This document shows, piece after piece, positions 1,641 to 63,947 of a stretch of DNA of 64,000 bases. Source of the stretch: Stylophora pistillata (Eukaryota). The stretch is from the NCBI RefSeq assembly GCF_002571385.2, contig NW_019217946.1, positions 357,427 to 421,426 of the forward strand, in the 5' to 3' direction. Position 1 is the first letter of the stretch; every line of letters begins with the position of its first letter. The position numbers were made by a program, and so were the translations under genes. The notes beneath the pieces are model-generated. The model saw nothing but the letters and a program-made list of their open reading frames with translations. It searched no databases and was not told where the DNA came from.

Positions 1641-1924
1641 TCATATCAAACTGTTTCCCCACTGCGATGGACATTTGTTTTTGTCGGTTCCAGCCTGGCG
1701 CGGCCGCTAACCCAGATGCCCTCCTGAGCAAATTTTCAAAATGGCGGNGATGGATGTCTTCCCCTGGGGTGGGATGGGTGGGTGTTGTCTTGCGATTATA
1801 TGAGCCTCTGGCTCGGGCAATATGGGCAACCATGCCCCACGCAAAGACATTAAACTTGATTACAGGAAGTGCAGGAGACGAGACGCATTGCAGCACTTTG
1901 TACAAGCTGAACCTTATCTAATAA

Positions 1925-21902: not shown

Positions 21903-24871
21903 TTAACACCTCGCACCAGGTAAAAAATTACAATTTAAATCGCCCATTATAATCACTTCTTTCATTAGCAATTTCTAAAACATTCTCAAACGACGACACA
22001 ACTCCACATTCAAGAAATCAGATCCTTTTGGGGGACGATAAAGTGTTCCCAATAAAATCCCTTTTGAGTGAGGCTGAATAAGTTCTACCCATATAGTTTC
22101 TAGGTCAGGTTTTTCTAAATCTTCCCTTCTAAACGCCGATAAAGAATCTGCTAAATAAACAAGAACCCCGTCACCTCTGCGTTTATTTTGGCGATCCTTG
22201 CGGTAAAGTTTATAGCCATCAATCTCTATTTCAGTATCGCAAACATTGTTAGAAAGATGACGTTCAGTTATTCCAAGAATACTAATTCCTTTGTGCGACT
22301 CTAATAAAACACGAGCTTGGTCAATCTTTGGTAGCAAGGATCGGATGTTTTGATGACATACCTTTAGGCCCTTCGAAAGTAACAACTCCGAAAGACTTTT
22401 AAGTTTAGGGTAGGCTGTGTTATCTCTCTCGGTGACTTCCTCAGCGTCCATCACGCCACCTACACTGCAGCTGTCACAACACTTGCTGTCCTCGAACGAA
22501 ATTCCGATACACTTTAGGTGGAAAAGACCATTGCATGCTTGACACGAAGCTTCACCTTGGTTCCTTCGGATTGTCTTAAGACAAAGTAAACACGAAGGAC
22601 GCTTAGTGTGGTTTACCGGACCAGGGTTTAGAGATATATTTCACACTTGCAACAGAATCCCGGCGGCGAAAAAATAGTTCACCAGTATAATTAACTGTCC
22701 AGGGTTGCCAAATTTGAAAGTAGTTCTGAAGTCTCGCTTTCCACAAGGAAAGCCTTCCCGACAGCCGAATCGAAATTTCCCTTGTTTTCACGTCTCCCGT
22801 AACGGCCATCGAGGTGATAAAATTAACAGAGGCATAACTTGGTTCAAACGAAGCGAAGCTGACAAAATGGCACGTCAAAGAATTCGCACCATGTTGTGAG
22901 CAAGGGATAACTTTTTGGGGCGAAAGTTGAGCAGCGCCGACTGAACGACAAGGAAAACCACAAAGCACAGCAAAACATGACCAGACGCCATGATACTTGA
23001 TGCTTTCCGGCGGGACACAACTGTCGAGCAAAAACTTGTCAAACTCCAAACAGATTCCCTCGAAGAGCTGAATCCTAAAAGTATTTTCTGGGAAAAATCA
23101 TTAAACAGCTAGGCGTTCGACCGAATTGGTCTGACACTTATGGGAAGGTAGCTCCTCTGGGGGTTTTCGCTCAGTAGTGCGAATTGGTCTTTTTAGGTGC
23201 GAGTTTGTAGGTGGCGAATTTGCAATGGGACGAAAATTCTAAACGGCTGATCACTTTGTGAAAAGTTAGACATCATTGGACCGATTTAACCCCGAAAAAT
23301 GTTCAAGTAAATCTCTTTTCTACCTATCACTAATACCTCCCTGTTGACGATTGTCTTCATCATGGTCACAAAGGGTGAAAACGAAATTTATCTCTAAACG
23401 CCTTTATGATTGGTTCTAAATCTATTAGAACCAAAGTTTACACACCATGGCCAAGTCTATGTTTATAGGTAAATGCTTCTGGCTTTATGATAAAATAATT
23501 AGTTATTTGAAAAGCATAACTGGCTTATTTGGGTCGTGCTGTAGGACCCAAAAGTTCCCTAACCATTTTAAATGAATGAAAAATGGTTGCTGTGTTACCT
23601 CTTGTAGGCTTAGTCTCAAATTAACTGAGCAAGCTAGGAGCTTAATTCTCTCTTTGAGTGGACAATTAAGTGTCTCACTTCATTTCTTCTTTCTTCATAA
23701 AAGCATTCTGAGATTTCAAGACGGGGTTGGCTTTTCATACAAAGAGAAACCGACCAAAATTCAGCTGGAAAGAAAGCTATTAGCCAATGTAGTCACGTCT
23801 CGGAGAATTTCATGTAATTCTAATATTTTTGCCCAACCAACCCTTCAATGCATCTACCAGTTGAATGGGCACGGTTCTCTTGTGACTGGTATGTGAGCAG
23901 AGGTCTTGTGTTACTGAATTCGGTCACACGCTGAACACCAGCGCCTTTCAATTGAACTGAAGTTAATATTGATGGTAGTTTTGTTCAAATATTTGAACGA
24001 ATGGAAACAAAAGCAATTCATTTATTTGGATTTTTGACACGCCCTCCTGAAGACTGGAGTTAGGTGAGTTTTAGAGAGAATGTGGTTTCAATGTTTTCCC
24101 GAGGAAAAACCGTTTTAAATACCTCGAAATTATTTACCTGTGACTTATCTACCGCTAGAGCACTACACGACTTTATTTCGTAACAGATCTTGCTTTGAAG
24201 AAGTTTTGTTTTACGCTTGAGAAATGTATCGGGATAGCGATTAAAAAGTCAGCTACTGACGATTTTGTTTTGGAAAAAAATAATGAAAAAAGGTTTATAA
24301 CGAAAGTCTTTAATTCAAATTCTAAGGTAATGGAAGATTACTTCACGTATTAGAGGCTCCTTTGCTTTCCTTACATCGCTTTACATCTCCAGACAAAACA
24401 TAAGAGATCCTCTTTTACTTTAACCGTAACGCAATGAATTATTTAAATTAAAAGAGTAAATCAAAGTAGAAAAAGACAGACTTATCTCAATATCTACCTC
24501 TCACTAGAAATTTCATTCGCTAAGACGCGATACTTAATATACTGGCATGGATAATACTTGGATAGTTTTCATGGTATTAAAGTTGTTGATGAAGGAAAAG
24601 TTGGGTGTTCATTTAAGGTCTTTTTTCTGAAACTGTTTACTCCTAGCTTACCTCTAACATCACATCGTTAATTCAAATGTGGAATTAAAAACGATACCCC
24701 TGTGAAACAAAGATGGAAAACAAAGCATGAGCTAAGAATTCTGAGCGTTATTTTGCTACAATGCTCCTAAAAAATTTATCAAAACCTACTTTTCCGAATC
24801 TTTTATGTAAATTGAAGTTTTTAAATTTTGATGATCAACTTCCCACCATAGGGCTCTTACGTGTAACCATC

Positions 24872-25451
24872 ATGACCGGGCCTTTCATTTTCCTGACCAT
24901 GATTCAAGCAATATATGCCACGAATGGTAAGTGACAATTATGTTAGTTATCTTGGAAGGATCATTTTACCCACAGTTCCTACGGGAGGAAGGATAAGCTC
25001 TTGACAAAGTGTTGTCAAGGACTGAGCCCAATCATTTTTGCCGTAGTAACTTTGAATCACTTTCGACCAGCAATGATAATTATCATTATAAAAATATTAG
25101 GGCTACTTTTATTATTAACAGTAGTGCTGTTAGTGGATTAGTATTGTAAGCATCTTTTTTATCATTACCATCATTTCTTACATTATTATCATTATAATAG
25201 TCTTAATCAAAATCATTAGTTTCGCTATCATTATTATGATTGCCATTAATAGAACTATTATTGGAATGAAGATAACTGTTACGAAAGGTAAGCCTGTTGT
25301 GCTGTTAGACTCTTTCAAAACTTAGCGAACATTTTATTTCTACACCAACACTCGATCGGTTAGCAGCAAAAGAAAATAGTCAAAATATACGATCACATCA
25401 CAGGGCATTAGTGTTGAAGGACCCAAAACGTATTCTACGCAGATAAAGCTA

Positions 25452-25532
<81 letters not shown>

Positions 25533-27740
25533 CCCAGGCAAAGTGCACACGAACAAGTAGGTTTTTTAATGCATCGCAAGGAGCGAATAAACATCGTTCG
25601 TGCACATTGCCCATGGTATTATGTTTTTATTTCGCATGTCAATGACTGGAAGTGAACAATTATGACAGGAACGATAGTATGTATGAAATAAATTCCTAAT
25701 CCAAAAAGGCTGCTGATCCTATTGCTACTTGTTTTGTTGTTGTTGTTGTTGCTTTTTTTTTTTTTACTAGACATTACGGCTGTTTCCATTTGCTAGAAAC
25801 GAAGCCATGAAAATGCATCTATGAGTAGCATCAAAAAAACTTCAGTTGTAAGTGTGCGTACTTTTAAAATTCGTAGAATTTACAATCCAAGGAAATGGTT
25901 CATATGAAGCCGGGAAACTAAAAGTGGACCTTCACCTCGAGTCGACTATGAACATAACATCTGAAACAACTGTCCCCCCAACTTCTATCATGACAACGCT
26001 ACCTCCAACCACAAACGCGACAACTATTCCTCCGACGTCGTCGTCGAGAACATCTCCAGCTGCATCTGAAACAATTCCCCCTTCTACACTACCTCCAACA
26101 CCAGGTCCTACAGTAAATTCTACGACGCTTGGGCCCGAGACAGGGGCCTCATCGAGACCCACAAATATTACGTCAACTCCAACAACCTTACCGCCAACAG
26201 CTGCAAAGGGTGACAACATAACAAGTACCACAGGGCAACCGACAATAAGTGCGGCAGTGAATGTCACTACCCCAACACCTGCGCCAGAGTATAATGATGG
26301 AAAACCTTTAGCAAACTCCAAGCAGTGTAAGTAAAATATTCAACCCACATTAGATATCAATTTTAAAAGAGAACGACAAATTAAAAACCCCACCGCTTTT
26401 AGCCTAATTGTTACCTTCCAGTGTGTTCTCGTTAACGTTTTCATTCCTCATCAATAGATGAATCCTTTTTAAAATACTTGTGTTTCGGGCAGTAACAGCT
26501 GTAGTCACTGTGGTGCTACTAAGGTTAGATGCATAGAAGTTGCTATGGCATCGACAAAAGAGGTGGCAAAGGTAGCAATAGCTATCAGGGGTTTGCACTC
26601 AAAAGCAGCAGTGATGGGAGGGGGGGTATTGAAGAGAGTGGCAATGATAGCGGAGGTAGTAATAGTATTAGTGACAGAGGTGAGTAGCACATTAGTGACA
26701 GCTCAGCGGAAGTGACAGTGGAAGCAAAGGGCGACGTAGAGGCCGCACCGGAAGTGTGTACACAAGTCTGATATAAATGGGGTTGTGATAAGGACAATGA
26801 ATTTGAACGACTCCCTAACATAAGCTTGGATTTAGTTTCAGCTTTAGATCGTACAGCCCTCGAGCTGCACAATTACTATCGCTCGATTCACGAGGCGCCT
26901 CTCCTAACCCTTGATGAAAACCTCCGAAAAGATGCTCAAGATTATGCTCTTAAAGTTGCTAGGAGCCAAATGCTACGGCCAGAACAAGATTTTGTGCTCA
27001 ACTCTAAAAATGAAGGAGAAAACCTGGGATTTAGATGCTCGACAATACGACCTGATCCTGAGAAAGCCTTGAGACAGATAATGAAGCGGTGGTAGGAAAT
27101 TCTCAGAGTGCTAACTCTCTTTACTCTTATCTTCTCTTACTTTTTCTCGTCTATGATCCTAGCTTTCCTCTCATTTTCGATATTTTGCGACTCGGCAGTG
27201 TAAATTGAACTGTCACTAGTAGAATTATTTCTCTGGTTCCCCCTCTTTATTAATGATCAAATCCCTCATTAGAAACTTTGTAATGTTACCGTGACAACCA
27301 AAACTACTATTTGGGAAAATTCCTGATCTACAGAAAAAAAATGTGCGAATGCTTTTTTGGACATTTGTGGCATAGTACAGTGTCGAGTGTTTTGTTCATG
27401 AAGTAACACTCAAATTATTCATTCAATTTTTTTATAACTGATCTTCAGGTATGACGAAGGCTGCCAATACAACTTTCAAGCACCACCAACGGACAAGTAC
27501 TCGTTCAGACACTTCACACAAATGACATGGAATGGAAGCAGAAGGCTAGGCGTTGGCATCACCTATGGGAAAATTAACAATCTGCATTGCTTGTACTTTG
27601 TCGCACGTTACAGACCCCGTGGAAACCTGGGAAACAAGCTCATATATATCAATAATGTCAAGAAAGGAGTTTTCGATTCGTCTTTTTGCAGACCAATAGT
27701 AAATCAAGTGCCTAACCAAGAGGTCATTTTAAAAGAATAA
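24872..27740 (+). CDS. CAP-3: secreted CAP protein with T/P mucin-like linker
   Basis: Exons 24872-24926, 25877-26326, ~26842-27091 and 27449-27740. Signal-like MTGPFIFLTMIQAIYA. CAP motifs LHNYYRSIH, GENLGFRC, WYDEGC, HFTQMTW and VARYRPRGN. Confidence 0.85.
25460..25528. repeat. (GA)n microsatellite
   Basis: Directly visible. Confidence 0.95.
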
Positions 27741-29387: not shown

Positions 29388-31928
29388 ATGAAAGCTTTGC
29401 AACTGTCTGCCATATGCCTTTCCATTGTCATAAGCATTTACTGGAACTATGGTGAGTGATTGAACCTTGAAAACAAACTGTTTCTTATCAGGCGCTCTTC
29501 AGCAAAACCTCGACTATAAACCCCGAACAAAAACTCAACCTTTGGATGACGGTTGTTTACATTGTGCCCCTTACTCATTCTATTTGCCCCAATAAGAACA
29601 GGAGGTTAAAAGGGAGATATATACAGGAATTAAGTTGTTCAGCTAGTCTTTGCATTATGGACGCTTCCATGCTACACAAAATGGAACAACGACGAAAATG
29701 AAAAACTGGTATTAATATAGTGTAAGTTTATAAAATTCACATCATAAAGGCAGGAGGAAAACCACTGCGTCCTGTGGAGGATTGGCTCTCGGGAAAAGCG
29801 AGAACCATATTCAGTTGACAGCAGAGTGGTGTAGTTTGAATTGAAACAATTCATATTCGTAGTCGTAAGCTCGTTATATATTCCATCTTTTACTTTTAAG
29901 TCCAAACAGGAAAACGAGGCCCAGTGAAGGATACTAAAAAGGACCAGTTCATGATAACAGGAAAGGGAACAACTAAAGGGGGCAAGACGAAGATAATCGT
30001 TTACATGCAGACTACTGGTGAAAATCCAATCAATCCAGCACTAGGTAAGAAACAAGGGAAGAAAGCTTCTAATGTTACACCTGATCATTCTGGTAAACTG
30101 AAACTCCGAGTCCGTCACCTACCACAACAATACCACTGTCTGCTCAGGTCACAAGTGCATCACCAAAACCAAAGAAAGGGAAACACTTTTAAGTCACACC
30201 AAAACACCACCAACAGGTGGCAAGGCCTAGCCAAAATCGGAGATTTGCACCGGGTCGGAGTGTGAAAAACTCCAGCGCAAAAAAGTTGGTATCAAGCTCT
30301 TTAAATAATGCAGCGAGGGCTACTGTGGACTCTGCTAAAGCTACATCAACACCCTCTGCGATTATCAAGTCCTCGTCAATGACCAGTGCTGGTTTCCTTT
30401 CCTCTTCTAACTCTGCTAAATCCACCCCTGCGCCTCAGTCCAGCGGAGTGGTGCCGGTAAAAAGCAAACAAGCCGCTACCAGTGGCTCACCCGGACCTTC
30501 GCCGCAACCTTCAAGAAAGCAACCTACAACCAGTAGTTCGTCGGCATCTTCACCTCCACCCGATCAGTCTTCGAGTCAGGCTTCAGTGCAGCCTAGTGCT
30601 ACAAATAGTACAGCTATCCAATCTTCATCTGTATCAAGTTTAGCTCCTTCTTCATCTTCACCTCCAGCAGTAATCTCTTCAACTTCAGTTTCCCTTGACC
30701 CAAGTGCGACGAAAAATGCAGTTCCTCAAGTTTCATCTCTCGCTAGTGTTGATCCTTTCTTGACTCTGTCACTTGCGATTAAATCTCCTAGTGCAGGCGC
30801 ATCAAGCGCTGCGGTTACCCAAACTTCCTCTCTTCCAGGGTCCAGTGCTTCTTCCTCTCCTGGATCAACCATTACACCCGCAAAGTCTTCCCCAACAAAC
30901 CCCAACAACTACTCCTTACTTTACATTTAAGCGATAACTTTCCTCGTGATTATTCTCCTTTTATGGTCAGTCAGTTTATATATCTGCACCTATGTACGCT
31001 ATTTAAACACTTTTAAGTCTCGAACTGATCGTTTCCCCCAGTTTCCCGAGACGAACACATAGCTCTGGATGAGCACAACTTCTTCGAGGCTTGCATAAAT
31101 CAGCGCCACTCAGTCTTAACAAAGATATGGTATTTGAAGCACGCGAGTACGCCAAAAAAATTTCTGTCGCTGGAAATCTTTCACAAGGATGAATCGCCAG
31201 ATAAACTGAAACAAATGGGTGAAGGAGAAAATATTGGACTGGTGTGTTCTAAGGTTGAACTATCAGCTGCGCGAGTAGAGAGGAAAGTCGTAGATACCCG
31301 GTAAGGTTTTATACAAATAATCTTGCCTCACTGGGATTCTGTTGTTGTATTTCATCAAATATCATTGAATTTACATATACACATGGTGAGAGACAATAAC
31401 ATATGAAAAACTATTACGTTAATCTATGGACGCAATGCTCACTTACTCGGCATACGGTACACAAAAATGCTTTTCAGAGATCAGGATTAGTTCGCAACAA
31501 ATTCAAGAAGTTCAAATAATTTTTAAGTGTCTGCATGTGAGTACGTACAAAAGGGAAATTCATGTCTACCGGGAAAAAGCAACTCGATTTTAAATTCATT
31601 CCCTCTCTTATTCTACTTGTAGGCACAGAGAGGCGTGTAAATATAACCTCCAAGATCCTGACCCGATGTCCAAAAAAGCAGCTCATTTCACACAGCTTGT
31701 GTGAGGTGCTTCTAAACAACTCGGCGTTGGTGTTGCCGTGACAAAAAATGGGAAAAAGAATTGTGTATACGTTGTTGCTTGATACAAGCCTATGGAAGCT
31801 CGAAAGACCCAAAGAGCCTTAAAACTAATTTCAAAAAAGGATTATTTGATGCTTCCATTGACTGTGCTGCCAGCTCAAAGAAAAAGTTTTTCATTGCCGT
31901 GAAAGATCATTGCTTCTTATCAGCTTAG
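29388..31928 (+). pseudogene. CAP-4: unprocessed CAP pseudogene with Ser-rich linker
   Basis: Exons 29388-29451, 29901-~30920, 31042-31300 and 31623-~31928. Frameshifts in exons 2-4. The conserved intron-split Trp is changed to Arg. In-frame TGA in HFTQLV* and VVA*YKP. Confidence 0.85.
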
Positions 31929-35439: not shown

Positions 35440-38400
35440 ATGTGGACATTTATTTTGCACTGTGCTGTGGTTACGCTGGGTATCACAAATTCTGCTACAA
35501 CAGGTAAGCAGGATGACCTCTCGTTTGAAACTATTAAAGATCTAGATATACTTAAACAATGTTACTCGCAAGATGGTGCTATTCTCATATCACAACAAAG
35601 TATCCTCGCGAGTTTGAAAGAAAATTCGAAGAAGATAGAAGGAAATTACGAACCAGATTATTGGTTGAGGGATGAAGCAGTTTTCATTTTTTTTTTCCTA
35701 TAAATATAGGTTTTACTTTTATCTTGTCTCTTTTCAACCATTTCCTAACTCACGGTTAAAATATCTTTTTACCAAATGAAAGACGAATAGTTATAAGATT
35801 AAATGAATAATCTTACAATAAGCATTGAAAGTTTGAACAAGAAAACCGATTGATGAAATGGTTGATGATTCACCTAAAGATGCCTCTCACTAAAATAAAC
35901 TTTCGACGTTATTTCGCTTCGTTCACTTTCACCCGACATTCATGCACTACCCGTGCTGCATAATTATTAATCACCATGGCATTGTCTCATTCATCTCCTC
36001 AGCTACGGTCTCTCGATCATTTCTGACAGATTTTGACAAGATGGATAAATTTACCACGAAGTCGCAATCGAAAAAACAAAGAATGACAATACCGCATTTT
36101 CTACGAACGTTTAATGGCAATTCAGTTTCACTGAGTTCTGCTTTTATATTGCCTGTTAAGCACAGGATAATTTCACAGACGTCAAACGCTCCTAACAAAC
36201 AGCTGCATCATCCTCCAGCCAGGAATTCATTGCCCCTCTACAAAGTGAAGCAAGGAGTTAATGGCGGCTTGCAAAATGGATATATAGCTCAACACCCCCT
36301 TGTACACCAAAGAGGAAGAAACGATAATAATACCACTAATACCAATAAAGTATTTGAAATGGTGGGACCACCTCTTGCACTCAACACTCAGTTAAAAGGG
36401 TTGTTCCACTCACCGAAAGGTCGTGTTGTGGCAAGCGCAAGCAACTTCAGTGGAAAAGCAAATAAACACAGTCCTCTAACGAACTATAGCAACAAAGGAT
36501 TCATTCTCGCAAAGCAATTGAAGGACACATCAGCTTTAAGAGAGAAGACGCCTTTAGACGAAGAAATAATCGTAATGGGAGCGCCTTTAATATTCACTAA
36601 AGGAAACAAAAAATTTCTCACTATTTCAAAACATACCAAAGGAAAGACAAGCAACATTTTAAGGAACAGGGCTGCTCCCTTTCATCAGAAAGCTTATACT
36701 CCTCAAAAACTTCAAGGAGTGCATGAGAGCAAAACGTCTTTGAATATGTTGGCTTTGCATAACAAGACGACACTTCGAAACGACAAGGATGTTAGTTCAT
36801 CAATGAGTCCCAAAAATATCCAAAATCACATCCCTTCAAATGGGAATTTCCATAAACAAGAAAATAATAAAGTGGCAAATCTCTTGAAACAAAACCAAAG
36901 TAAAACGTCAAGTCAAAGTGAAAGTCAAAAGGAAACATTTGGGAATGAAACAGTGGTAATTACAGACAATTTTCTTCCTCATAACGTAAGTTTGAAGCAT
37001 CCTGATTCAACTTATTTTCACAAACAAACACCTAATAAAAGTGGAAATCAACTCCAGAGCATAGAACAGAAACAAACAGACGTTTTCTTTGAGACTGAAC
37101 TGGGTTCTAATGAAACTAGCAAAGCAGAAGGCCCTGGTAAAAATACTACTGGTTACCAAGAATACAACGCAAAAGAAAATCATGGCAGTGAAGAAACCAA
37201 CTCTATATTCACAACTATAATTGGTGACAGGCAAGAAAACCTTCCGCCATTTCCTGAAGAAAATTCTGAAGAAAAAAATGTCGAAGATTTGCAAATTTTC
37301 AGCGATGATAGTGGTAGCGTAAGCAAAGACCGAGATGAAGGAGAAAGGGATGGTCAGTTTCAAGGTAAACCGATGACTTCAGCTTCAAACCAGCGGTACA
37401 TGCCAGTGGATGACTTTGGGTCGCCTTTTTATGGCAATGAGACAGGTAAGCGTCTTCACAGTTGGACTAGTAATTTGGTAATTATATAGACCTCTAGTAT
37501 CTTGACAGGAGTACATCTGTGGATGTTATCGCAGATTGTTTAATTATAATTGCCTTTAAATCCCTTTTCGCAATATTTTGAAACTCTATAAATGATAGTT
37601 CCATGATAAAAATAATTCGCATCTCCAATACGAAACATAACTATTTTATGATTAAATTATATTTGCTTTGCGTTCAAAATTAATCACCATTGTAAGATGA
37701 AACTTCCGTTGAACTAAATTTCGCAGACGAGTATTTTAAGCGAGACGCCCTTGCAGCCCACAACAGGTATCGAGCTTTGCACAATGCTCCTCCTCTGCAA
37801 CTTAGCCGGGAGCTGTCCGCGGAGGCTGAAAAGTTTGCCAAACGACTGGCTAAAGTGGGTGTCGCATATCATGAAATAAACCGTAACCTTCGGAAGGAGG
37901 ATGAAGGTGATAATGTGGCAAGAGGGTGCAGTGAGTGGGGAGGGCTGACATCTACTGGAGCGATACATAGATGGTGAGAGCCTGCATTTCATTGTACATG
38001 CATAACTGTAAACAAGTAAACCGGCTGAAAAACCTTTTTTTGATTTCTTAAAGATTTCTTGATGGAATCTAAAAACATAATTTATCACCTGCTTAGAAGT
38101 TCAAGAGAACTTTTAACTTCTTTTGTTTTGTAATAGGTCGTGAAAATAATTTCATTTTCTCGGCCTTTTCAGATTAAATATTGACATTTTTCAAATGGAC
38201 GGCAGACTTTTAATTCAAACAAGAATCATCAATCGTACTTAAACGTTTTAAAAAATAACCAACCACAGGTATAGCCAAGTGTGTTATTTTAACTGGAGCA
38301 AGAACGCCATTCAACCCGAAGCGAAGAATTTCATGCAATTAATATGGAAAGGAACCAATCACATGGGAATAGGAAGAGCTTTTGGAACTCGCCGTGGCCT

Positions 38401-53690: not shown

Positions 53691-55336
53691 AAAAATTCTG
53701 CAATCAGCGTCAGTGGCACTTCATACTCCTCGATGACATTCACTCAACGGACTTAAATAGAGGAGGACTTCATCTTGGGGAGACAGGTATTGCCAAAATG
53801 TATAACAACTTCGCGAATAAATTACATGAATGTAGTTGACCTACTGGCCGTCTGTTCAATTCAGAGCGTAATCGCGACCTTGGAAATCCAATCGTTTCTC
53901 ACCAATTTGAATCATAACATGGAAAACAGCATAATACAGGTATAATCTTATCTTGTTGATAAATGTTTAACCAATTTCCAGCAGCAAACTATCAGTTTCA
54001 CGCCGAATCAAAGACGTTTTTTATGGCTTGAAAAACATTACGGAAACTGTTGATTATGAAAATTTTCTCAGATAAGCCTTGTTGTTAAACTCGAGAATAG
54101 ACAAATAGAATAATATCATGCCCATAAATTAAAGCCAGAACAAGTTTACAAATTTTTCATTGAAATAAAGAGAAATACTGAAATTGTAAAACTTACTGGG
54201 TTGCTTTCTTTGTTGACATCGACCCAGTACTAGTGATGAACTGTTAATGAGAAAGGCAAATGAATAAAGTTAAAATTTCCTCTAACAAATCGTTTATTTT
54301 TGCTTAGCTATCTCACAGACATCCTCTGTTAACAATAAACTGTCAAAATTGCCAACAATTTTCGCTCAAAGTAAGTTAAAATGGCTTTGTTTTGTTAAAC
54401 TTTACTCACGTTCTAGCCGCGACGGCAAAATGGCTTTCTTCACGTCACAGACAAGGCCGCGACGGCTGGAAACCTCACAACGACAGCAACCGGAAGTAAT
54501 TCTGGCAGTAACTTCATTTCCGCTTGCCGTCCCAGATGTCTGCCGTCGTAGGATCTTAAGCTCGTTATTATTTTACAGTGCTACCTAACAGGGTAAATAT
54601 CACCTACTACTGCTGGCAACAAACTACAACTGACTTCTGGTAAGAGATTTGAAGAACATCATCTTTTAAAGAAGAAAACCCAGCACTGTTGTGTCACTGT
54701 TAAGGTTAAGGTCAAATCAAGTTGTCAATGAGTAATTCTGATTACAAGGCGAAAACTGTCAGGATTTTTTTTAAGTGCTTAGAGATCGTTCGCATATTGA
54801 TTTATAAAATTCCCTTATAAGATTTAGTTAACCTGGTACACTATTAAAAAGGGTTTTTGATATTTCAATCGAGGATGAGGATATAGAGGCAAAAATAAAT
54901 TGGTTAGACTGGTCATGAGACTTGTTAAGTACGATCACTCCGCCGTCTAAAATCTCGCGCCCATCAGAATAGACTAAATGTACTTTTTAACATCCACATT
55001 GGTGAAACTGGCCTTGTTCCCAATCCGTAGAACGGTGAATATCCAAAGAAGTCGTCACACAGAGCAATTGATTTTACCTTTTAATTTCACGTTGGAATGA
55101 ACTACGAAGTCTCAAACGATCTTTTTCTTCCTTCGTCTCTTACGTGTCAAAAGTGCGCCCGCGAAACAACAAAGCGGTAAATTTGTCAAAATCACCGGGG
55201 CAACGAGTTAACCATTAAATGGCTAAATAATTACAATTTTTTTATTCTTAACAGGCTTTATCTTTATATCTAAAGACCTCCCTCGGTAGGTTCAAATTGA
55301 AAAATCATGTAAAGATTGCTCACTCACATCCCGGGT

Positions 55337-55915: not shown

Positions 55916-57403
55916 NTGCTGTTTCTATTTTCTTCATTAAATGAAGAAATTTTCTGGTCGTCAAGCTGTTTTTCTTCCTTCGATTCATCTAATGAACTTG
56001 GATCTATATTTGCCAGCCATTCTGACTCTTCGTCGTCGGAAATATGATTCAAATTGTCCGCCATTTTTTTTTTTTTTTTCGTAACTACAATCCAATTCTT
56101 CGCTTGCGCGATGCGAGAAAACCTGTTTAACCTGTACTTTACAATAGACGAGTACAAATACCGCGTGATATTTGCACTCGTCTATGGTGTTATTTGTTCT
56201 CGTCTAGGTGTAATTGGATAATAAAGGTACTTATTGCAAATAGGGCAATGAGGAGGACTTGGTCAAATATTTCAAAGAGCTTCTTTTCCTTTCAGATCTT
56301 TAAATATAAATCTGAAAATGATACATTCCCCGCCTGCGTTGCCACCATCCAGGAATAAGGTGGCGTTCAATGCTGGGTTATGACAATTTCGCTAACGTCG
56401 CCTCATTTAACAAAGAATACAATTATTGAAAACTCTGAGCATTGCGTGATAGTGGCCTGTGCAAAGAAACAGGTCGCTCATACCACCGGGTATGGCTGGT
56501 GACCGGGTACCCACGATGCACTTACTTGTACCAGTAAAAAAAAGAAATAAATAACGCTATTCATTGGGTCAAGAAATGAAGCATCGCTGAAAGGCGGAGC
56601 CTTTCTCCGCCCCATTACCATCTTACCGTTGCCCAATCAACCAGTTTTCTTTTATTTCCCTACCAATTTACGAGCACAGTTTTGTCCAGGGTTGATCAAA
56701 GGATAAGAAGTGGTTCATTATAAAGGTGTTGATCCTAAATATCTGCCTTTGCAAATCATATAAATTTTTTTTTTTTTTTTTTTTTTTTTTGCTCTTTCCT
56801 TCTCTATTATTTTCAAGGTACAACGAAGTCTGTCGTCCGGGATACGACTTTTATATCCCCTCTTTTAGCGCTGGAATAGGCCATTTCACTCAAGTAGTGT
56901 GGAAAGAAAGCATAGTTCTTGGCATTGGAATAGCTTCAGGAAAGAAAAACGGCATGAACTGTGCATATATTGTGGCTATATATAGACCGGCTGGGAACAT
57001 GGTAGGAGAGTTTACCCAAAATGTGCCGGAAGGAGACTTTAATAAGGACAGCTATTGTGCAACAGTTAAGAGGCATACGCTCTTGGACAAGCAATGGAAG
57101 GCAGCTTTCGTTAACAATTCAAATGCCACAACGGGGTCGGCTGAGCTTCGCGGCCAATTTGAGGAACAATAAAGCAGCAAGAAAGAAAATATTGCCACAA
57201 AAAGACAAAAACAATCAGCGATTATTGTTATGCTATTTCGTTTTCATTGTTTCTCTTATACTTTGAAAACACATACAAATAAAAGCGTAAACAAACCATG
57301 GCAACCACTGCAAGACAAACCAGGACAAGACTTTGCTCGCCCGACATCTATTTTATCTTACACTTTACCAACAATGTATCGAGAAGCCCAGCTAAAACAG
57401 GAA

Positions 57404-59053
57404 TTAACCATGTTTGTGATGAGAAATATGACCTTTCTTTTTGCTGTTTAACAGCCCGAGGTCTTCGCCTCGTGGCTTCTTAAACCCAGTATGTTTAGCG
57501 TTCAAGCCATCCCTGGGCGGAGGAACTACAATGAGAAGAGGAAAGCAAACAGAAGCAATTAGCTCTCTTTAAGACTTACACTTTCCAGAGTTTATGGAAA
57601 CTTTGATTTTCCACCTTGGAATGCGAAATAAAGATTAAATGAATAGCCATTCAGTTATGCCATAAAACCAAACCAGTTTTTGTATTAGTAGTCATTTTAC
57701 ATCATTAGCACTAGTAATCGCGTAATTTCTCGTGCAATTTGGAATAGTGAAGCATCAGTATTTTTTCCAAAGGCTAGAAACATTGCACGAGCCATAAAGC
57801 GTGTTCAATTCACAGTCTAAAATATCAAGAAGTTTTTCCTGAGGCAATTACTACAATTAAGGAGAAATTCCCGGTGTCTCCGCCAATCAGCACTCTTGCT
57901 CTCTATGTTATAACTAGTGTAACACAAAATAACCAAAAAAATTTGACAAAGGCATCATTTCAGCAGATTTACAGCGCAAAAAAGCTAGCCTCGTGTTCGT
58001 AACCACCAGATGCAAATCGACTTGTTTATTAGCCTTATCGGATGCCAATTCATTACGTCGAGGCAAAGAAATCGAAACAACATACCTTTCCATCCAATTG
58101 GCTGTTGCTTCCCATCTCCCAGACTTTCAGTCCCCACCGTGCCTCCCATTGTGGGAGAGGTAGTTGGCTCTAGTGCGGCACCAGCTGCTCCCTCTGCAGG
58201 ATTACCAATCCGACATGTCAAGAGAACATGAGAAAAACGTTTGTGCTAGTTGGTTCTTTGTATTTATAGAGGATAAGTGAAAGCAAAAAGCCAAAATATA
58301 AAGTAAAACAGTTTACCAGTACCTCCTCCTAGACCTTCTGATCCCTCTGCGGGAAGAGCCCCTCCCTCCTGGCCACCTACTCCTTCTACTGGACCTTCTG
58401 GAGGAGCAGGTATACCTGCTCCAAATCCTCCTTCCGAGCCTCCTACTCCTCCTACTGGGCCACCTTCGCCTCCCACTGGGGCTCCTAGACCTCCTGCTGC
58501 GCCTCCCACTGGGGCTCCTATACCACCTGCTGCACCTCCTAGCCCTTCTGCTGGGCTAACTGCGCCTCCAACTGGGGGCGCTAATCCTCCTACTGGGCCA
58601 CCTACTCCTCCCACTGGGGCTCCTATACCTCCTGCTGCGCCTCCCACTGGGGCTCCTATACTACCTGCTGCACCTCCTAGCCCTCCTGCTGGGCTAACTG
58701 CGCCTCCAACTGGGGGTGCTAGTCCTCCTACTGGGCCTCCTAACCCTCCTACTGGACTGACTGCGCCTCCTCCGAGGCCACCTGCAAGGCTTCCTACACC
58801 TTTGCTGCTTTTACTCTTACCAGATAAGCCAATTGCCTTACTTGCTGTGCCAACCACCTTACCTGCTACCTTTCCTACCTTTGTTCCCTTCAAAGCTATG
58901 CTTCCAACTTTCGCTGCCAGGCCTAATAATCCATAAGGTTTCTGTTGGCTACCCACCTCTTCCGCCGGACCTCCTCCTGCGGGTCCTACCCCTCCTGCCA
59001 TCCCCTCATCGGGTCCTCCAGCTCCCGTTCCCATCCCACCGATTTGTCCTACC
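57404..59053 (-). CDS. Gly-rich elastin-like protein, copy A (5' end in gap)
   Basis: Exons 59053-58317, 58193-58086 and 57525-57404, nearly identical to copy B. Confidence 0.7.
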
Positions 59054-59726
59054 NNNNNNNNNNNNNNNNNNGATTGTAAAGCGTTTAGAGGCTTGCAATA
59101 ATTTATTATCATTTATTCAACGGATGGGTGAACTAATCTTGATCATTCATGATCCCTCGAAAGATCCTGTTTATTTCTACTATGTAAGTCCTAGCCAGAA
59201 TTAGATAGGGTCCACTGTTTTAAATTCGTCCTGAGCATCTCCTCTGCTAGGCTCTATCAATTTGGTTTAAGGTAACGTTCTGTATAAAACTATGAGTGCA
59301 TATTTCCATTGCCGTCCTTGAATAGATATAAACGAGCGTCAGGAATGGCTTTATGATCTTTCGCCAATCATTAGTCACATGATAGTCACGAGACCGGTCC
59401 TGGAGAATTGATCCCTCTGTGGTATTAAGAAATAAAAATGAGAGTAACTGTATAACACTTCTGGATAGTCCAGCTTGGCGCATGAATTCCCCCCACCCTC
59501 CCCCCTTCCTTCCACTGCCCTTTTAACCACCACCTCTGCAAGGTCAACACCACTTTATTACTTATTTGTTAGAACTTTCGTAACAGTTCGTTTTCTACAG
59601 TCTAGTTATATGAAGGAACTCTCCATCATATAAATTACATAGATAGGGAGCTACATCATAACGATCTTTTGATTCCAGCAAGCCAGCATGTCTTCACACC
59701 AGCATATCTTCACTTTATCTTTTTAG

Positions 59727-61281
59727 TGTTAGCCGAAGACGAACAACAAGGTTTAGCAGCTCTCAATGAATTTCGACAAGTACATGGGGTTCCTGCGATG
59801 ACACTGGACAGAGAAATGTGCGATGAAGCTGGTCAGTACGCCAGGCGGCTTACACGCATGGGTACTCTTAAGCATTCAAAGGATGAAGAAAGACATGGCC
59901 AGGGAGAAAATCTATCAATGGGATGTTCATCAGACGCTTCACCGCAAACCGCTGAGCAAGCCGTGAAAAGCTGGTGGGCTTTTTTTTACTTCTTTAATCA
60001 GGTTTTCGAGGTGTTGTCTCGAAGTTTTACCTCTTAATTAAATGCTCCAAATCAGATACAACGGATCGTGCATCATACGTAAAATGCTCCAAAGACAGAT
60101 GTCAATTATCAGGGTAACTGAAATCTCATTACAGGGACTCGTTATCACAACCTGGACTAATTCTTAAAAACTTCGTCTTAGAAATGCTCCGGCTCAGCGT
60201 TTTAGAAAAAATGATTTGCGACGGTACTAAACGAAGGACTCTATACCAAAGACTTGCTTAAAGCAGAGAACTTATTTTTAGAACCAGTTTGAAGTGAGAG
60301 GGGCCAAAAGTTTGGAGATTCGATCCCTTCATGTATAGGCATTTATTCCAAATAGGGCAATGAGGAGGACTTGGTCAACTATTTCAAAGAGCTTCTTTTC
60401 CTTTCAGATCTTTAAATATAAATCTGAAAATGATACAGTCCCCGCCTGCGTTGCCATCATCCACCAAGGTGGCGTTCAATGCCGGGTTATGACAGTTTCG
60501 CTAACGTCGCCTCATTTAATAAAGCACCCAGTTTTTGAAAACTCTGAGCATTGCGTAATAGTGGCCTGTGCAAAGAAACAGGTAGCTCATACCGACGGGT
60601 ATGGCTGGTGACCGGGTACCCACGATGCACTTACTTGTACCAGTAAAAAAAAATAAAAATAACGCTTTTCATTGGGTCAAGAAATGAAGCATGGCTGAGA
60701 GGCGGAGCCTTTCTCCGCCTCATTACCTTCTTACCGTTGCCCAATCAACCAGCTTCTTTTTTTCTTTTATTTCCCTACCAATTTACGAGCACAGTTTTGT
60801 CCAGGGCTGATCAAAGGATAACAAGTGGTTCATTATAAGGTTGTTGAGCCTAAATATTTGCCTTTGCAAATTATATAAATTACTTTTCCGTTTGTTTTTT
60901 TTCTTCCCTTCTCTAACATCTTCAAGGTACAACAAAGTCTGTCGTCCGGGATACGACTTTCATACCCTCTCTTTCAGCGCTGGAACAGGCCATTTCACTC
61001 AAGTAGTGTGGAAAAAAAGCATAGTCCTTGGTAATGGATTAGCTTCAGAAAAGTAAAACGGCATGAACTGTGCGTATATTGTGGCTAGATATAGACCGGC
61101 CGGGAACATGATGGGAGAGTTTACCCAAAATGTGCCGGAACGAATCTTTGATAGGGACAGCTATTGTGCAACAGTTAAGAGGCATACGCGCCTGGACAAG
61201 CAATGGAAGGCAGCTTTCGTTAACAATTCAAATGCCACAGCGGGTTCGGCTGAGCTTCGCGGCCAATTTGAGGAACAATGA
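59727..61281 (+). pseudogene. CAP-9: CAP paralog (exons 3-4 visible) with premature stop
   Basis: Exon 59727-59973 (ALNEFRQVH, GENLSMGC) and exon 60927-61281, with in-frame TAA at 61054-61056. The conserved YNE reads YNK. Confidence 0.8.
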
Positions 61282-61512
61282 AGCAGCAAGAAAGAAAATA
61301 TTGCCACAAAAAGACAAAAACAATCAGCGATTATTGTTATGCTATTTCGTTTTCATTGTTTCTCTTATACTTTGAAAACACATACAAATAAAAGCGTAAA
61401 CAAACCATGGCAACCACTGCAAGACAAACCAGGACAAGACTTTGCTCGCCCGACATCTATTTTATCTTACACTATACCAACAATGTATCGAGAAGCCCAG
61501 CTCAAAAAGGAA

Positions 61513-63259
61513 TTAACCATGTTTGTGATGAGAAATATGACCTTTCTTTTTGCTGTTTAACAGCCCGAGGTCTTCGCCTCGTGGCTTCTTAAACCCAGTA
61601 TGTTTAGCGTTCAAGCCATCCCTGGGCGGAGGAACTACAATGAGAAGAGGAAAGCAAACAGAAGCAATTAGCTCTCTTTAAGACTTACACTTTCCAGAGT
61701 TTATGGAAACTTTGATTTTCCACCTTGGAATGCGAAATAAAGATTAAATGAATAGCCATTCAGTTATGCCATAAAACCAAACCAGTTTTTGTATTAGTAG
61801 TCATTTTACATCATTAGCACTAGTAATCGCGTAATTTCTCGTGCAATTTGGAATAGTGAAGCATCAGTATTTTTTCCAAAGGCTAGAAACATTGCACGAG
61901 CCATAAAGCGCGTTCAATTCACAGTCTAAAATATCAAGAAGTTTTTCCTGAGGCAATTACTACAATTAAGGAGAAATTCCCGGTGTCTCCGCCAATCAGC
62001 ACTCTTGCTCTCTATGTTATAACTAGTGTAACACAAAATAACCAAAAAAATTTGACAAAGGCATCATTTCAGCAGATTTACAGCGCAAAAAAGCTAGCCT
62101 CGTGTTCGTAACCACCAGATGCAAATCGACTTGTTTATTAGCCTTATCGGATGCCAATTCATTACGTCGAGGCAAAGAAATCGAAACAACATACCTTTCC
62201 ATCCAATTGGCTGTTGCCTCCCATCTCCCAGACTTTCAGTCCCCACCGTGCCTCCCATTGTGGGAGAGGTAGTTGGCTCTAGTGCGGCACCAGCTGCTCC
62301 CTCTGCAGGATTACCAATCCGACATGTCAAGAGAACATGAGAAAAACGTTTGTGCTAGTTGGTTCTTTGTATTTATAGAGGATAAGTGAAAGCAAAAAGC
62401 CAAAATATAAAGTAAAACAGTTTACCAGTACCTCCTCCTAGACCTTCTGATCCCTCTGCGGGAAGAGCCCCTCCCTCCTGGCCACCTACTCCTTCTACTG
62501 GACCTTCTGGAGGAGCAGGTATACCTGCTCCAAATCCTCCTTCCGAGCCTCCTACTTCTCCTACTGGGCCACCTTCGCCTCCCACTGGGGCTCCTAGACC
62601 TCCTGCTGCGCCTCCCACTGGGGCTCCTATACCACCTGCTGCACCTCCTAGCCCTTCTGCTGGGCTAACTGCGCCTCCAACTGGGGGCGCTAATCCTCCT
62701 ACTGGGCCACCTACTCCTCCCACTGGGGCTCCTATACCTCCTGCTGCGCCTCCCACTGGGGCTCCTATACCACCTGCTGCACCTCCTAGCCCTCCTGCTG
62801 GGCTAACTGCGCCTCCAACTGGGGGCGCTAGTCCTCCTACTGGGCCTCCTAACCCTCCTACTGGACTGACTGCGCCTCCTCCGAGGCCACCTGCAAGGCT
62901 TCCTACACCTTTGCTGCTTTTACTCTTACCAGATAAGCCAATTGCCTTACTTGCTGTGCCAACCACCTTACCTGCTACCTTTCCTACCTTTGTTCCCTTC
63001 AAAGCTATGCTTCCAACTTTCGCTGCCAGGCCTAATAATCCATAAGGTTTCTGTTGGCTACCCACCTCTTCCGCCGGACCTCCTCCTGCGGGTCCTACCC
63101 CTCCTGCCATCCCCTCATCGGGTCCTCCAGCTCCTGTTCCCATCCCACCAATTTGTCCTACCGGTCCCTCGATGTCAACTTGTAGATTTAATCTGGTTGC
63201 GCCGTTTTTTTTTATTGTCCCAGTGCCAGAAATAGTTAATTCAGAATCTTGGCCCACCT
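61513..63259 (-). CDS. Gly-rich elastin-like protein with the CAP-cluster N-terminal motif but no CAP domain, copy B (first exon not identified)
   Basis: Exons 63259-62426, 62302-62195 and 61634-61513 are joined by phase-1 GT-AG introns. The last acceptor has CTAAT plus a long pyrimidine tract. The protein ends ...KKKGHISHHKHG*. Confidence 0.75.
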
Positions 63260-63715
63260 CTGAAATAATCAATAAATAATACGATTTTAATGAGCATACT
63301 TAATTTTCTTTCTCTTTCTCGGAGAAATTAGCTCTATAGCTACTCTGGTAAATCCGAGGTGAAATAAAGGTGATGTATGTATGTCAAAGCGATTGCGATT
63401 TTGGACCACGACTTTGTCTAGGTCAATAAAAAAGCAAGTTGGTCATTAGTAGTCAGCTTTCTTTATCGAACAAGCTTAGATTATTTCAGTTTTCCTACAT
63501 GGCCAAAACCGCCGATGAGAGTTCACAAAAGGGTTGCGAGGCGAATTTAGGGAACTCGTCAGAATATTTTTTTCTGCAGAATTAAAGATTGTTTCGAAAC
63601 TCGTAATCGTTTTGGATGGTCATGGGCGCAATTATTTCATCAAGCTTCAGAAAAGCTGAGTGGTAGTCGAGATTTTATATTTAAATGGCCGCAACTGAAA
63701 TAAATATATCTTATA

Positions 63716-63771
<56 letters not shown>

Positions 63772-63947
63772 NNNNNNNNNNNNNNNNNNNNNNNNNNNNN
63801 NNNNNNNNNNNNNNNNNNNNNNNNNNNNNNNNNNNNNNNNNNNNNNNNNNNNNNNNNNNNNNNNNNNNNNNNNNNNNNNNNNNNNNNNNNNNNNNNNNNN
63901 NNNNNNNNNNNNNNNNNNNNNNNNNNNNNNNNNNNNNNNNNNNNNNN

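What the first reader, a model, noticed from the sequence alone, without database searches (positions are those of the whole stretch)
61513..63259. CAP-less family member: hairpin module fused to an elastin-like Gly/Pro/Val/Ala repeat region
Seen: the N-terminus EVGQDSELTISGTGTIKKNGATRLNLQVDIEG closely matches CAP-8 DLGHDSLITIFGTGILKQNGTTHLKLQIEIEG and has the same phase-1 acceptor. It continues into PVGG/GGLG/GGAAGGIGAP repeats, including a duplicated 46-aa unit, and then two short exons with no CAP domain. Known: elastin and other elastomers use similar G/P/V/A motifs. Inference: this is an inverted duplicate of a CAP-7/8-like gene that lost the CAP domain and turned its linker into a structural elastomer, i.e. 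a new gene born within the array.
Basis: partly seen in the sequence, partly recalled or inferred. Interest (0 to 1): 0.8.

Follow-up and report, generated by a model that had tools for sequence, protein, structure and literature searches.

The report
CAP-less glycine-rich offshoot of coral CAP genes
In a Stylophora pistillata coral CAP-gene cluster, an unannotated open reading frame (in two near-identical copies) keeps both ends of a CAP protein but has a long disordered glycine-rich repeat in place of the CAP domain; no tool here could show whether it is expressed.

Summary
On the minus strand, 61513-63259 holds a 3-exon, all-phase-1 open model. It has a 32-residue beta-hairpin module (56% identical to the CAP-8 pseudo-exon, 61% to full-length CAP proteins of Oculina and Desmophyllum). 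About 245 Gly/Ala/Val/Pro-rich residues follow, including a 46-residue tandem duplicate, then two short exons and no CAP domain.

- The window is Stylophora pistillata.
- Exon 3 is homologous to the conserved basic C-terminal tail of full-length family members. Both ends of a CAP gene are therefore kept and the middle is gone.
- The exon-2 donor lines up with the donor of the ancestral hairpin exon.
- A second copy lies at 57404-59053, 99.5% identical and cut by an N gap.
- Relatives already carry short Gly/Pro/Ala linkers, so the repeat is an expanded linker.

Origin from a CAP-7/8-like gene is well supported. "Elastomer" rests on composition only (G 43%, P 12% in the repeat; predicted disordered).

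Reality as a gene is open. No start or signal exon is readable, there is no canonical poly(A) signal, no matching protein exists among 1.84 billion representatives (so it is absent from the S. pistillata annotations held there), and no ortholog was found.

The parts
62426..63259 (-). Exon 1 of the CAP-less gene (copy 2): hairpin module plus Gly-rich region. The acceptor AG is just upstream and the donor GTAAAC follows 62426.
   Evidence: ORF; translation; splice strings.
63165..63259 (-). Beta-hairpin module, about 32 residues, shared with the CAP family.
   Evidence: tblastn E 8e-10 to 51505-51603. 61% identity to the Oculina and Desmophyllum CAP proteins. AlphaFold2 strands at residues 6-15 and 21-30, pLDDT 77-89.
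63054..63161 (-). Acidic Gly-rich spacer, residues 33-68.
   Evidence: Composition; predicted disordered.
62898..63053 (-). Lys-rich segment, residues 69-120, with 10 Lys and no acidic residue. Predicted as two helices. No relative found anywhere.
   Evidence: Composition. Helices 75-87 and 90-105. Hydrophobic moment up to 0.55. No hits.
62544..62897 (-). Gly/Pro/Val/Ala repeat region, residues 121-238, including the duplicated 46-residue (138-nt) unit.
   Evidence: TRF; 43/46 identical units and G 43%, P 12%; pLDDT about 30.
62427..62543 (-). Acidic Gly/Glu/Pro-rich end of exon 1, residues 239-277.
62303..62425 (-). Predicted intron 1, 123 nt, containing stops in frame.
62195..62302 (-). Predicted exon 2, 36 codons, phase 1 to 1. 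Its 3' end and donor align with the donor of the CAP-8 pseudo hairpin exon.
   Evidence: Best local alignment 62209-62183 against 51674-51700, reached by 11 of 1000 shuffles.
61635..62194 (-). Predicted intron 2, 560 nt, with no CAP relic.
   Evidence: Family HMM finds nothing; tblastn gives only chance-level hits.
61513..61634 (-). Predicted exon 3, homologous to the basic C-terminal tail of full-length family members. Stop TAA at 61513-61515.
   Evidence: 0 of 5000 shuffles reach the score against P0017 and P0030. It is the only window match to the P0017 tail.
57404..59053 (-). Copy 1 of the same gene: exon 3 at 57404-57525, exon 2 at 58086-58193, exon 1 from 58317 up to the gap. 99.5% identical to copy 2 including the introns.
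59054..59071 (.). 18-N gap that cuts copy 1 where its hairpin would start. Not filled.
63772..63947 (.). 176-N gap 512 nt upstream of exon 1. The missing start or signal exon could lie here or beyond the window. Not filled.
51506..51601 (+). Hairpin of the CAP-8 pseudo-exon, the closest in-window relative. It is followed by a frameshift and sits inside the CAP-7 intron.
49792..49968 (+). Hairpin-linker exon of the annotated CAP-7 (PRY2-like, P0016).
59669..61281 (+). CAP-9, the convergent neighbour. Its stop lies 231 nt from the Gly gene stop. It has an in-frame TAA at 61054-61056.

Best explanation
This is a CAP-domain-less derivative of the coral signal-hairpin-linker-CAP-basic-tail family, annotated in S. 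pistillata as PRY2-like.

Origin (well supported). An inverted copy of a CAP-7/8-like gene kept its hairpin exon and its C-terminal tail. It lost every CAP-coding part. Its short Gly/Pro/Ala linker grew by rounds of in-frame tandem duplication (21-, 33-, 63- and then 138-nt units) into a stretch of about 245 residues. That stretch also holds a Lys-rich helical insert of unknown origin. The unit was later duplicated in tandem, or homogenised by gene conversion.

Product (inferred). If expressed, it would be a secreted, largely disordered, cysteine-free Gly-rich protein. The two family-specific end modules (beta-hairpin and polybasic tail) would carry a hydrophobic Gly/Pro/Val/Ala chain, suited to self-association in an extracellular matrix. 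Secretion is inferred only from the family, because the first exon is not readable. Matrix or elastic behaviour is inferred from composition alone.
For: - Species and family: the window is S. pistillata.
- Hairpin homology at protein and DNA level, with a shared phase-1 acceptor.
- The hairpin is 61% identical to the hairpins of the full-length CAP proteins of Oculina patagonica (P0030) and Desmophyllum pertusum (P0015). In D. pertusum the CAP exons follow directly (L002 23269-23550 and 25203-25556).
- Exon 3 aligns end to end with the C-terminal tails of P0017 and P0030, with 0 of 5000 shuffles reaching the score. It is the only match to that tail in the 64-kb window.
- The exon-2 donor is collinear with the CAP-8 pseudo-exon donor.
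- Relatives carry short Gly/Pro/Ala/Thr or Gly/Tyr linkers after the hairpin.
- No CAP relic is present.
- The frame is open through 277 + 35 + 39 codons in both copies. By contrast, the neighbouring CAP-8 pseudo-exons and CAP-9 carry stops or a frameshift.
- AlphaFold2 predicts a confident hairpin, two helices in the Lys-rich part and disorder elsewhere.
- The repeat has G 43% and P 12%. High combined Pro+Gly is the shared trait of self-assembling elastomers (PMC5703643, citing Rauscher 2006).
Against: - No start codon or signal exon lies in the 512 readable bases upstream; the frame has a stop and no ATG before the acceptor.
- No AATAAA or ATTAAA lies within 600 nt after the stop, whereas CAP-7 and CAP-9 have one at 106 nt.
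- No protein in 5.8 billion clusters (word search) or 1.84 billion representatives (HMMER) matches anything beyond the hairpin. The ORF is therefore absent from the S. pistillata protein sets held there, although CAP-7 is present.
- No ortholog was found in the Tara Pacific pocilloporid contigs, in three other coral loci or in JGI metagenomes.
- The two copies differ at 3 synonymous and 3 non-synonymous coding sites, and the introns are just as similar. There is no signal of purifying selection.
- GGN-rich repeats rarely mutate to stops, so an open frame is weaker evidence here than elsewhere.
- This is a short-read draft assembly with gaps on both sides.
Confidence: 0.55

Rival explanations
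1. Dead relic. The ORF is an untranscribed or non-coding remnant of an inverted CAP paralog. Its linker minisatellite expanded neutrally, and the frame stays open only because the units are multiples of 3 nt and GGN/GCN/GTN/CCN codons seldom mutate to stops.
For: - Absent from the protein databases that do hold the neighbouring S. pistillata gene.
- No readable first exon and no poly(A) signal.
- No selection signal between the copies.
- The surrounding CAP-8 and CAP-9 are decaying, and a DDE transposase ORF sits nearby.
- No ortholog found.
Against: - The non-repetitive parts are also intact in both copies: the hairpin, the 52-residue Lys-rich segment, exon 2 and the tail.
- Three GT/AG introns keep phase 1 and deliver the frame to a tail that still ends at the family's usual stop position.
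- The hairpin is closer to those of distant corals (61%) than CAP-7 (39%) or the CAP-8 pseudo-exon (38-56%) are.
- At 27% DNA divergence from the CAP-8 pseudo-exon, a neutral sequence would be expected to carry stops or frameshifts, as CAP-8 does.
Confidence: 0.35
2. Real gene, different job. It would not be an elastic fibre but a silk-like framework or inhibitor protein of the skeletal organic matrix, as with molluscan shematrins and Lys-rich KRMPs. Alternatively it would be a precursor of cationic amphipathic or Gly-rich antimicrobial peptides in mucus.
For: - A Gly-rich region, a Lys-rich region and a basic C-terminus occur in a calcifying animal.
- Shematrins, KRMPs and other Gly-rich silk-like proteins act as shell framework proteins or mild mineralisation inhibitors, and KRMP3 activity maps to its Lys-rich region (PMC4660305).
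- The Lys-rich segment is predicted helical with a moderate hydrophobic moment.
Against: - No sequence homology to any such protein.
- No Tyr, Asp-rich or Cys motifs.
- No dibasic processing sites around the Lys-rich part.
- No expression or proteomic data.
Confidence: 0.15
3. Assembly artefact. The two copies, or the repeat length, would be products of short-read assembly, for example a haplotig placed in tandem, so the true locus differs from what is written.
For: - Copy 1 ends exactly at an N gap, and the sequence beyond the gap is unrelated to the copy 2 upstream region.
- 99.5% identity is in the range of allelic difference.
- N runs of varied length suggest a scaffolded short-read assembly.
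Against: - That fits gene conversion or a nested duplication better than a haplotig.
- The ORF, its splice sites and its tail are read independently in two contigs.
- The annotated CAP-7 model uses the exon next to copy 1.
Confidence: 0.2

Closest known systems
Coral hairpin-linker-CAP-tail proteins: S. pistillata PRY2-like (P0016), Oculina patagonica LOC144649653 (P0030), Desmophyllum pertusum OS493_005239 plus downstream CAP exons, and Logan transcript P0017
   Same: Homologous beta-hairpin exon with the same phase-1 acceptor. A Gly-rich low-complexity linker follows it directly. The basic C-terminal tail is homologous. The ORF lies in the same gene cluster.
   Different: There is no CAP domain (PF00188) at all. 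The linker is about 245 residues instead of 20-60. It has a Lys-rich helical insert and two novel introns. It lies in inverted orientation. The first exon has not been seen.
Notothenioid antifreeze glycoprotein genes, born from a trypsinogen-like protease gene
   Same: The same mode of gene birth. A duplicate of a secreted-enzyme-type gene keeps its ends and loses the catalytic or globular middle, and a short coding element is amplified into a long repeat that becomes the new protein (PMC5850335, citing Chen et al. 1997). The new gene sits next to its precursor.
   Different: The family, repeat and organism differ. For AFGP both function and expression are proven, whereas here neither is. Here the amplified element is an existing coding linker, not an intron-exon junction.
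Tropoelastin and elastin-like polypeptides
   Same: A Gly/Ala/Val/Pro-dominated, predicted disordered hydrophobic repeat (G 43%, P 12%, A 17%, V 13%). A Lys-rich, helix-prone segment sits between Gly-rich parts. The C-terminus is basic (PMC5703643 for the Pro+Gly rule).
   Different: There is no sequence homology. It lacks VPGVG-type pentapeptides, poly-Ala KAAK cross-link motifs and the C-terminal Cys pair. Glycine is much higher and the chain carries acidic residues. Coacervation and cross-linking are untested.
Cnidoin, the Hydra nematocyst elastomer
   Same: A cnidarian, repetitive, Gly/Pro-containing disordered protein proposed to act mechanically (PMC4321713).
   Different: Cnidoin has Gly/Gln/Met/Cys repeats flanked by minicollagen cysteine-rich domains and a propeptide. 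This ORF has no Cys and almost no Gln or Met in the repeat, and there is no homology.
Molluscan silk-like shell matrix proteins (shematrins, KRMPs)
   Same: Modular Gly-rich plus Lys-rich or basic low-complexity secreted proteins in a CaCO3-forming animal (PMC4660305).
   Different: There is no homology. Those proteins are Gly/Tyr-rich, whereas here Tyr is nearly absent. Presence in the skeleton is untested.

Membership tests
CAP superfamily (Pfam PF00188, CRISP/Ag5/PR-1) | A CAP (SCP) domain | tested here: not met
   Pfam finds no family in any of the three exon products at E up to 1. A family HMM finds nothing in the three minus-strand frames of 61300-63300, yet scores 172 and 83 bits on CAP-9. 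All CAP exon matches in the window lie on the + strand.
Coral hairpin-linker-CAP-tail subfamily (PRY2-like) | N-terminal beta-hairpin module after a phase-1 acceptor | tested here: met
Coral hairpin-linker-CAP-tail subfamily (PRY2-like) | Conserved basic C-terminal tail (LLNSKKK...HK type) ending the protein | tested here: met
Coral hairpin-linker-CAP-tail subfamily (PRY2-like) | Signal peptide exon (MW.. type) upstream of the hairpin exon | tested here: inconclusive
   None is found on the minus strand in 63260-63771. A 176-N gap and the window end follow, and these were not to be filled.
Tropoelastin | Sequence homology to vertebrate tropoelastin | tested here: not met
   The HMMER search of 1.84 billion representatives gave 14 weak hits. 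Of the 8 retrieved, all but P0012 are unrelated low-complexity proteins, and no hit scored above 45 bits. PDB sequences gave no hit.
Tropoelastin | Alternating hydrophobic (VPGVG-like) domains and Lys/Ala cross-linking domains | tested here: inconclusive
   One Lys-rich helical segment is flanked by Gly-rich segments, and there are PVGG/GAPVGG motifs. There are no poly-Ala KAAK motifs and only one such alternation.
Self-assembling elastomeric proteins (functional class) | High combined Pro+Gly content with hydrophobic side chains and disorder | tested here: met
   The repeat has P+G 0.55 with Ala and Val abundant. pLDDT is about 30. The criterion is taken from PMC5703643.
Self-assembling elastomeric proteins (functional class) | Coacervation, cross-linking and reversible extension | not testable with these tools
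   Needs recombinant protein and biophysics.
Cnidoin / minicollagen-associated nematocyst proteins | Flanking minicollagen cysteine-rich domains and Gly/Gln repeats | tested here: not met
   None of the three exon products contains a cysteine. The repeat composition is G/A/V/P. Features are as described in PMC4321713.
Expressed protein-coding gene | Transcript with the predicted junctions, or an annotated or observed protein | not testable with these tools
   No RNA data are at hand. Indirectly, no identical or similar protein exists in the collections.

The most novel reading that the evidence does not exclude
A reef-building coral has recently made a new secreted structural protein in the way Antarctic fish made antifreeze. 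It would have gutted a duplicated CAP gene, kept its targeting ends (hairpin and polybasic tail), and amplified the Gly/Pro linker into an elastin- or silk-like disordered chain with a Lys-rich cross-linking or binding helix. It would be invisible so far because it is unannotated, and so absent from every proteomic search database.
Probability: 0.15. Interest if true: 0.75.

Novelty: new variant of a known kind. Interest (0 to 1): 0.5.

Why it matters
If it is expressed, it would be a clean, datable case of gene birth by domain loss plus linker amplification in a cnidarian, with the precursor family still next to it. It would also be a candidate matrix or elastic protein of a model coral that current annotations, and therefore skeleton, mucus and cnidocyst proteomics, cannot see. 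It further shows that the hairpin and the basic tail of this CAP subfamily are separable modules; the tail survives in this window only in the CAP-less copies. If it is not expressed, it is an ordinary decaying paralog with an expanded coding minisatellite.

Tried and rejected
- Word-index protein search with exon 1, whole and with residues 1-125: no hits.
- HMMER search of 1.84 billion representatives: 14 weak hits. Of the 8 retrieved, all but P0012 (the D. pertusum hairpin protein) are unrelated low-complexity sequences. P0005, the most similar at 64%, sits on a marine metagenome contig among prokaryote-type genes.
- PDB sequence search: nothing.
- JGI metagenome scan with the N-terminal 125 residues: nothing.
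- Search for the gene next to CAP orthologs: Tara Pacific contigs L004-L009, contigs L003, L010 and L011, and D. pertusum L002 show no Lys-rich, exon-2 or minus-strand exon-3 match. The Tara contigs end 570 nt after the CAP stop, so absence there is weak.
- CAP relics in the introns: a 26-residue match to the start of the CAP N exon at 62051-61974 (E 0.02) was not confirmed by the family HMM or by blastn, and was dropped.
- Exon 2 against the CAP-7 linker at protein level: not significant, with 611 of 5000 shuffles reaching the score.
- AlphaFold2 of full-length CAP-7 with a 3-sequence alignment: too low in confidence (mean pLDDT 37) to say whether the hairpin docks on the CAP domain.
- dN/dS between the two copies: too few differences (3 and 3) to be informative.
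- Look-ups of the S. pistillata and Oculina gene records for flanking DNA: not on record.
- Literature searches for a Stylophora glycine-rich or CAP-array protein: nothing relevant.
- Joined model: the three exons were searched only separately and by reference. The N runs were not filled.
Full report
**What is there.**
The minus strand of 61513-63259 carries an open frame of 299 codons (62373..63272). Its in-frame exon part, 62427-63257, translates to 277 residues. The frame has a stop and no ATG upstream of 63272, and a good acceptor (T-rich tract plus CAG) ends at 63260. The exon therefore starts at 63259 in phase 1. A donor (G|GTAAAC) follows 62426. Two further exons, 62195-62302 and 61513-61634, keep phase 1 through standard GT/AG sites and reach a TAA at 61513-61515.

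Exon 1 is 35% Gly, 13% Ala, 10% Val and 9% Pro. None of the three exon products contains a cysteine. Exon 1 divides as follows:
- a 32-residue module;
- an acidic Gly-rich spacer;
- a 52-residue Lys-rich segment with 10 Lys and no acidic residue;
- a 118-residue Gly/Pro/Val/Ala repeat with G 43% and P 12%;
- an acidic Gly/Glu/Pro end.

Tandem Repeats Finder reports a 138-nt unit (2.2-2.6 copies, up to 94% matches) laid over older 21-, 33-, 42- and 63-nt periodicities. The two full 46-residue units are 43/46 identical.

**Where the window comes from, and the family.**
The CAP N exon at 50282-50554 is 99% identical to the protein named PRY2-like of Stylophora pistillata (P0016, 284 residues). 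That model shows the family layout:
- a signal exon at 49394;
- a hairpin-linker exon at 49792-49968;
- a CAP N exon;
- a CAP M/C exon at about 56821-57172.

All CAP exons of the roughly nine genes in the window lie on the + strand. Both lie inside the large CAP-7 intron, next to a DDE_Tnp_4 transposase ORF. They are pseudo-exons. CAP-9 (59669-61281) has an in-frame TAA at 61054-61056 where CAP-7 has AAA.

**The hairpin link is real.**
- The module matches the CAP-8 pseudo-exon with 18/32 identical residues (E 8e-10 within the window) and 73% DNA identity over 109 nt. The DNA match runs from 13 nt inside the intron to the end of the module.
- The only non-trivial hit of the exhaustive HMMER search was a 122-residue protein (P0012). 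Its cluster mate is Desmophyllum pertusum KAJ7374886.1.
- In the D. pertusum genome that hairpin exon is followed directly by CAP exons on the same strand (L002 22722-, 23269-23550 and 25203-25556). It is therefore a full-length family member whose model was truncated.
- In an alignment of six hairpins, the CAP-less gene is 61% identical to both Oculina patagonica and D. pertusum, 56% to the CAP-8 pseudo-exon and 39% to CAP-7. It is thus the S. pistillata copy closest to the form seen in other coral families.
- AlphaFold2 on exon 1 alone gives strands at residues 6-15 and 21-30 with pLDDT 77-89. It gives two helices (75-87 and 90-105, pLDDT about 55-68) in the Lys-rich part, and pLDDT about 30 across the repeats.

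**New evidence on origin.**
- *Tail.* Full-length relatives end in a conserved basic tail. It is seen in the Logan transcript P0017, in Oculina P0030, in three D. pertusum genes and in the Tara Pacific contigs. Exon 3 aligns with that tail up to the last residues. The scores are 51 and 49, and 0 of 5000 composition-preserving shuffles reach them. With the P0017 tail as query, the only matches in the whole window are the two copies of exon 3. CAP-7 and CAP-9 of S. pistillata stop just before the tail.
- *Donor.* The best local alignment between the sequence after the CAP-8 hairpin and everything after the hairpin in this gene falls on the exon-2 donor (62209-62183 against 51674-51700). Only 11 of 1000 shuffles reach that score. 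The hairpin-to-donor distance is 55 nt in the pseudo-exon and about 940 nt here.
- *Linker.* Relatives already have short Gly-rich linkers after the hairpin: Gly/Pro/Ala/Thr repeats in D. pertusum, Gly/Tyr in Oculina, and a Pro/Thr/Gly/Ala stretch in CAP-7.
- *No CAP relic.* No trace of CAP coding sequence remains between the hairpin and the tail.

Together these points show that a complete family gene, in inverted orientation, kept both ends, lost the CAP part and expanded its linker in frame. This is the mode of origin described for notothenioid antifreeze glycoprotein genes from a trypsinogen-like gene (PMC5850335).

**Two copies.**
56222-59053 and 60334-63162 are tandem units offset by 4109 nt. 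It jumps to about 99.5% from roughly 61200 through the whole Gly-rich gene, introns included. Copy 1 stops at the 18-N gap 59054-59071, just where its hairpin would begin, and the sequence beyond the gap is unrelated to the copy 2 upstream region. In coding sequence the copies differ at 3 synonymous and 3 non-synonymous sites, which says nothing about selection. Gene conversion or a nested recent duplication fits the step in identity better than a misplaced haplotig, but only a long-read assembly can settle it.

**Is it a gene?**

For:
- Both copies are open through all three exons.
- The non-repetitive parts are intact.
- Three introns preserve phase and deliver the frame to a homologous tail that ends at the family's usual stop.
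- The neighbouring CAP-8 and CAP-9 have decayed at equal or lower divergence.
- The hairpin has stayed close to the form seen in the other coral families.

Against:
- No start or signal exon lies in the 512 readable bases upstream. A 176-N gap and the window end follow.
- No AATAAA or ATTAAA lies within 600 nt after the stop, while CAP-7 and CAP-9 have one at 106 nt.
- Nothing in the two protein collections matches beyond the hairpin, although S. pistillata CAP-7 is present in them. I infer that the annotations held there did not call this gene.
- No ortholog turned up near CAP orthologs in other corals or in JGI metagenomes. The sampling is thin, however, and the Tara contigs (presumably Pocillopora, inferred from the project and the 81% identity) end 570 nt after the CAP stop.

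I put the chance that it is an expressed protein-coding gene at about one half.

**How it would work.**
Shown:
- a confident beta-hairpin;
- a helix-prone cationic segment;
- a long, cysteine-free, hydrophobic, Gly/Pro-rich chain predicted to be disordered;
- a polybasic tail.

Inferred:
- Secretion, by analogy with the family's signal exon.
- Self-association of the Gly/Pro/Val/Ala chain. High combined Pro+Gly with hydrophobic side chains is the common trait of self-assembling elastomers (PMC5703643).
- Anchoring or targeting through the two end modules inherited from the CAP family.

It is not a member of the elastin family, because there is no homology and there are no VPGVG or KAAK motifs. 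It is not a member of the cnidoin family, because it has no cysteine-rich domains and no Gly/Gln repeats (PMC4321713). An equally composition-based alternative is a silk-like skeletal matrix protein in the manner of molluscan shematrins and KRMPs (PMC4660305). A cationic peptide precursor is another.

**Limits.**
- The three exons were searched separately and by reference.
- The N runs were left as they are.
- No contig was taken to be human.
- No RNA data or eukaryotic genome collection could be searched by DNA.

**Verdict.**
The proposed origin is supported and extended. The elastomer function and the "new gene" status remain untested. This is a new variant of a known kind, a CAP-family derivative without the CAP domain, and is of moderate interest.

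Noticed in passing
window 56222-59053 vs 60334-63162: Identity between the two tandem units jumps from about 90% (CAP M/C exon part, up to about 61200) to about 99.5% (the whole Gly-rich gene including introns). This suggests gene conversion or a nested recent duplication.
   Followed up: partly
window 61054-61056: CAP-9 carries an in-frame TAA where CAP-7 has AAA. CAP-9 is probably a pseudogene, or this is an assembly error.
   Followed up: partly
They lie inside the large intron of the annotated CAP-7, beside an insertion with a Harbinger-type DDE_Tnp_4 ORF (53441-53839).
   Followed up: partly
L004-L009 (Tara Pacific metagenome contigs) vs window 49783-49935: The 81%-identical CAP-7 ortholog, presumably from Pocillopora, lacks most of the hairpin exon. 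Homology runs up to 49782 and resumes at 49936. These contigs keep the basic tail that S. pistillata CAP-7 has lost.
   Followed up: no
L002 10001-25556 (Desmophyllum pertusum MU826827.1): The annotated 132-residue protein KAJ7374886.1 looks like a mis-joined model. It joins the signal exon of one gene to the hairpin exon of the next, 12 kb away, and reads on into the intron. The CAP exons that follow are left out. A second hairpin exon at about 10955-11291 has a frameshift.
   Followed up: partly
window 13479-13817, 16200-16970, 25852-26331, 30193-30927, 35894-37486: The upstream CAP genes carry long Ser/Thr/Pro-rich (mucin-like) or otherwise low-complexity exons after more divergent hairpin-like stretches. 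Linker length and composition vary widely across the array.
   Followed up: no
window 62373-62425: If the exon-1 donor is not used, the frame runs on for 17 codons into a strongly hydrophobic, aromatic C-terminus before a stop. This would be a possible alternative, membrane- or anchor-like end.
   Followed up: no
window 803-1921 (+) and 18797-22454 (-): Reverse-transcriptase-bearing retroelement ORFs (RVT_1) are interspersed in the CAP array.
   Followed up: partly
L012 (Logan SRR13022789 contig, 1039 nt): A spliced transcript from a close relative (91% identical to CAP-7) encodes the full layout of signal, hairpin, linker, CAP and basic tail. The ancestral tail was therefore lost only in the sequenced S. 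pistillata CAP-7 lineage.
   Followed up: no
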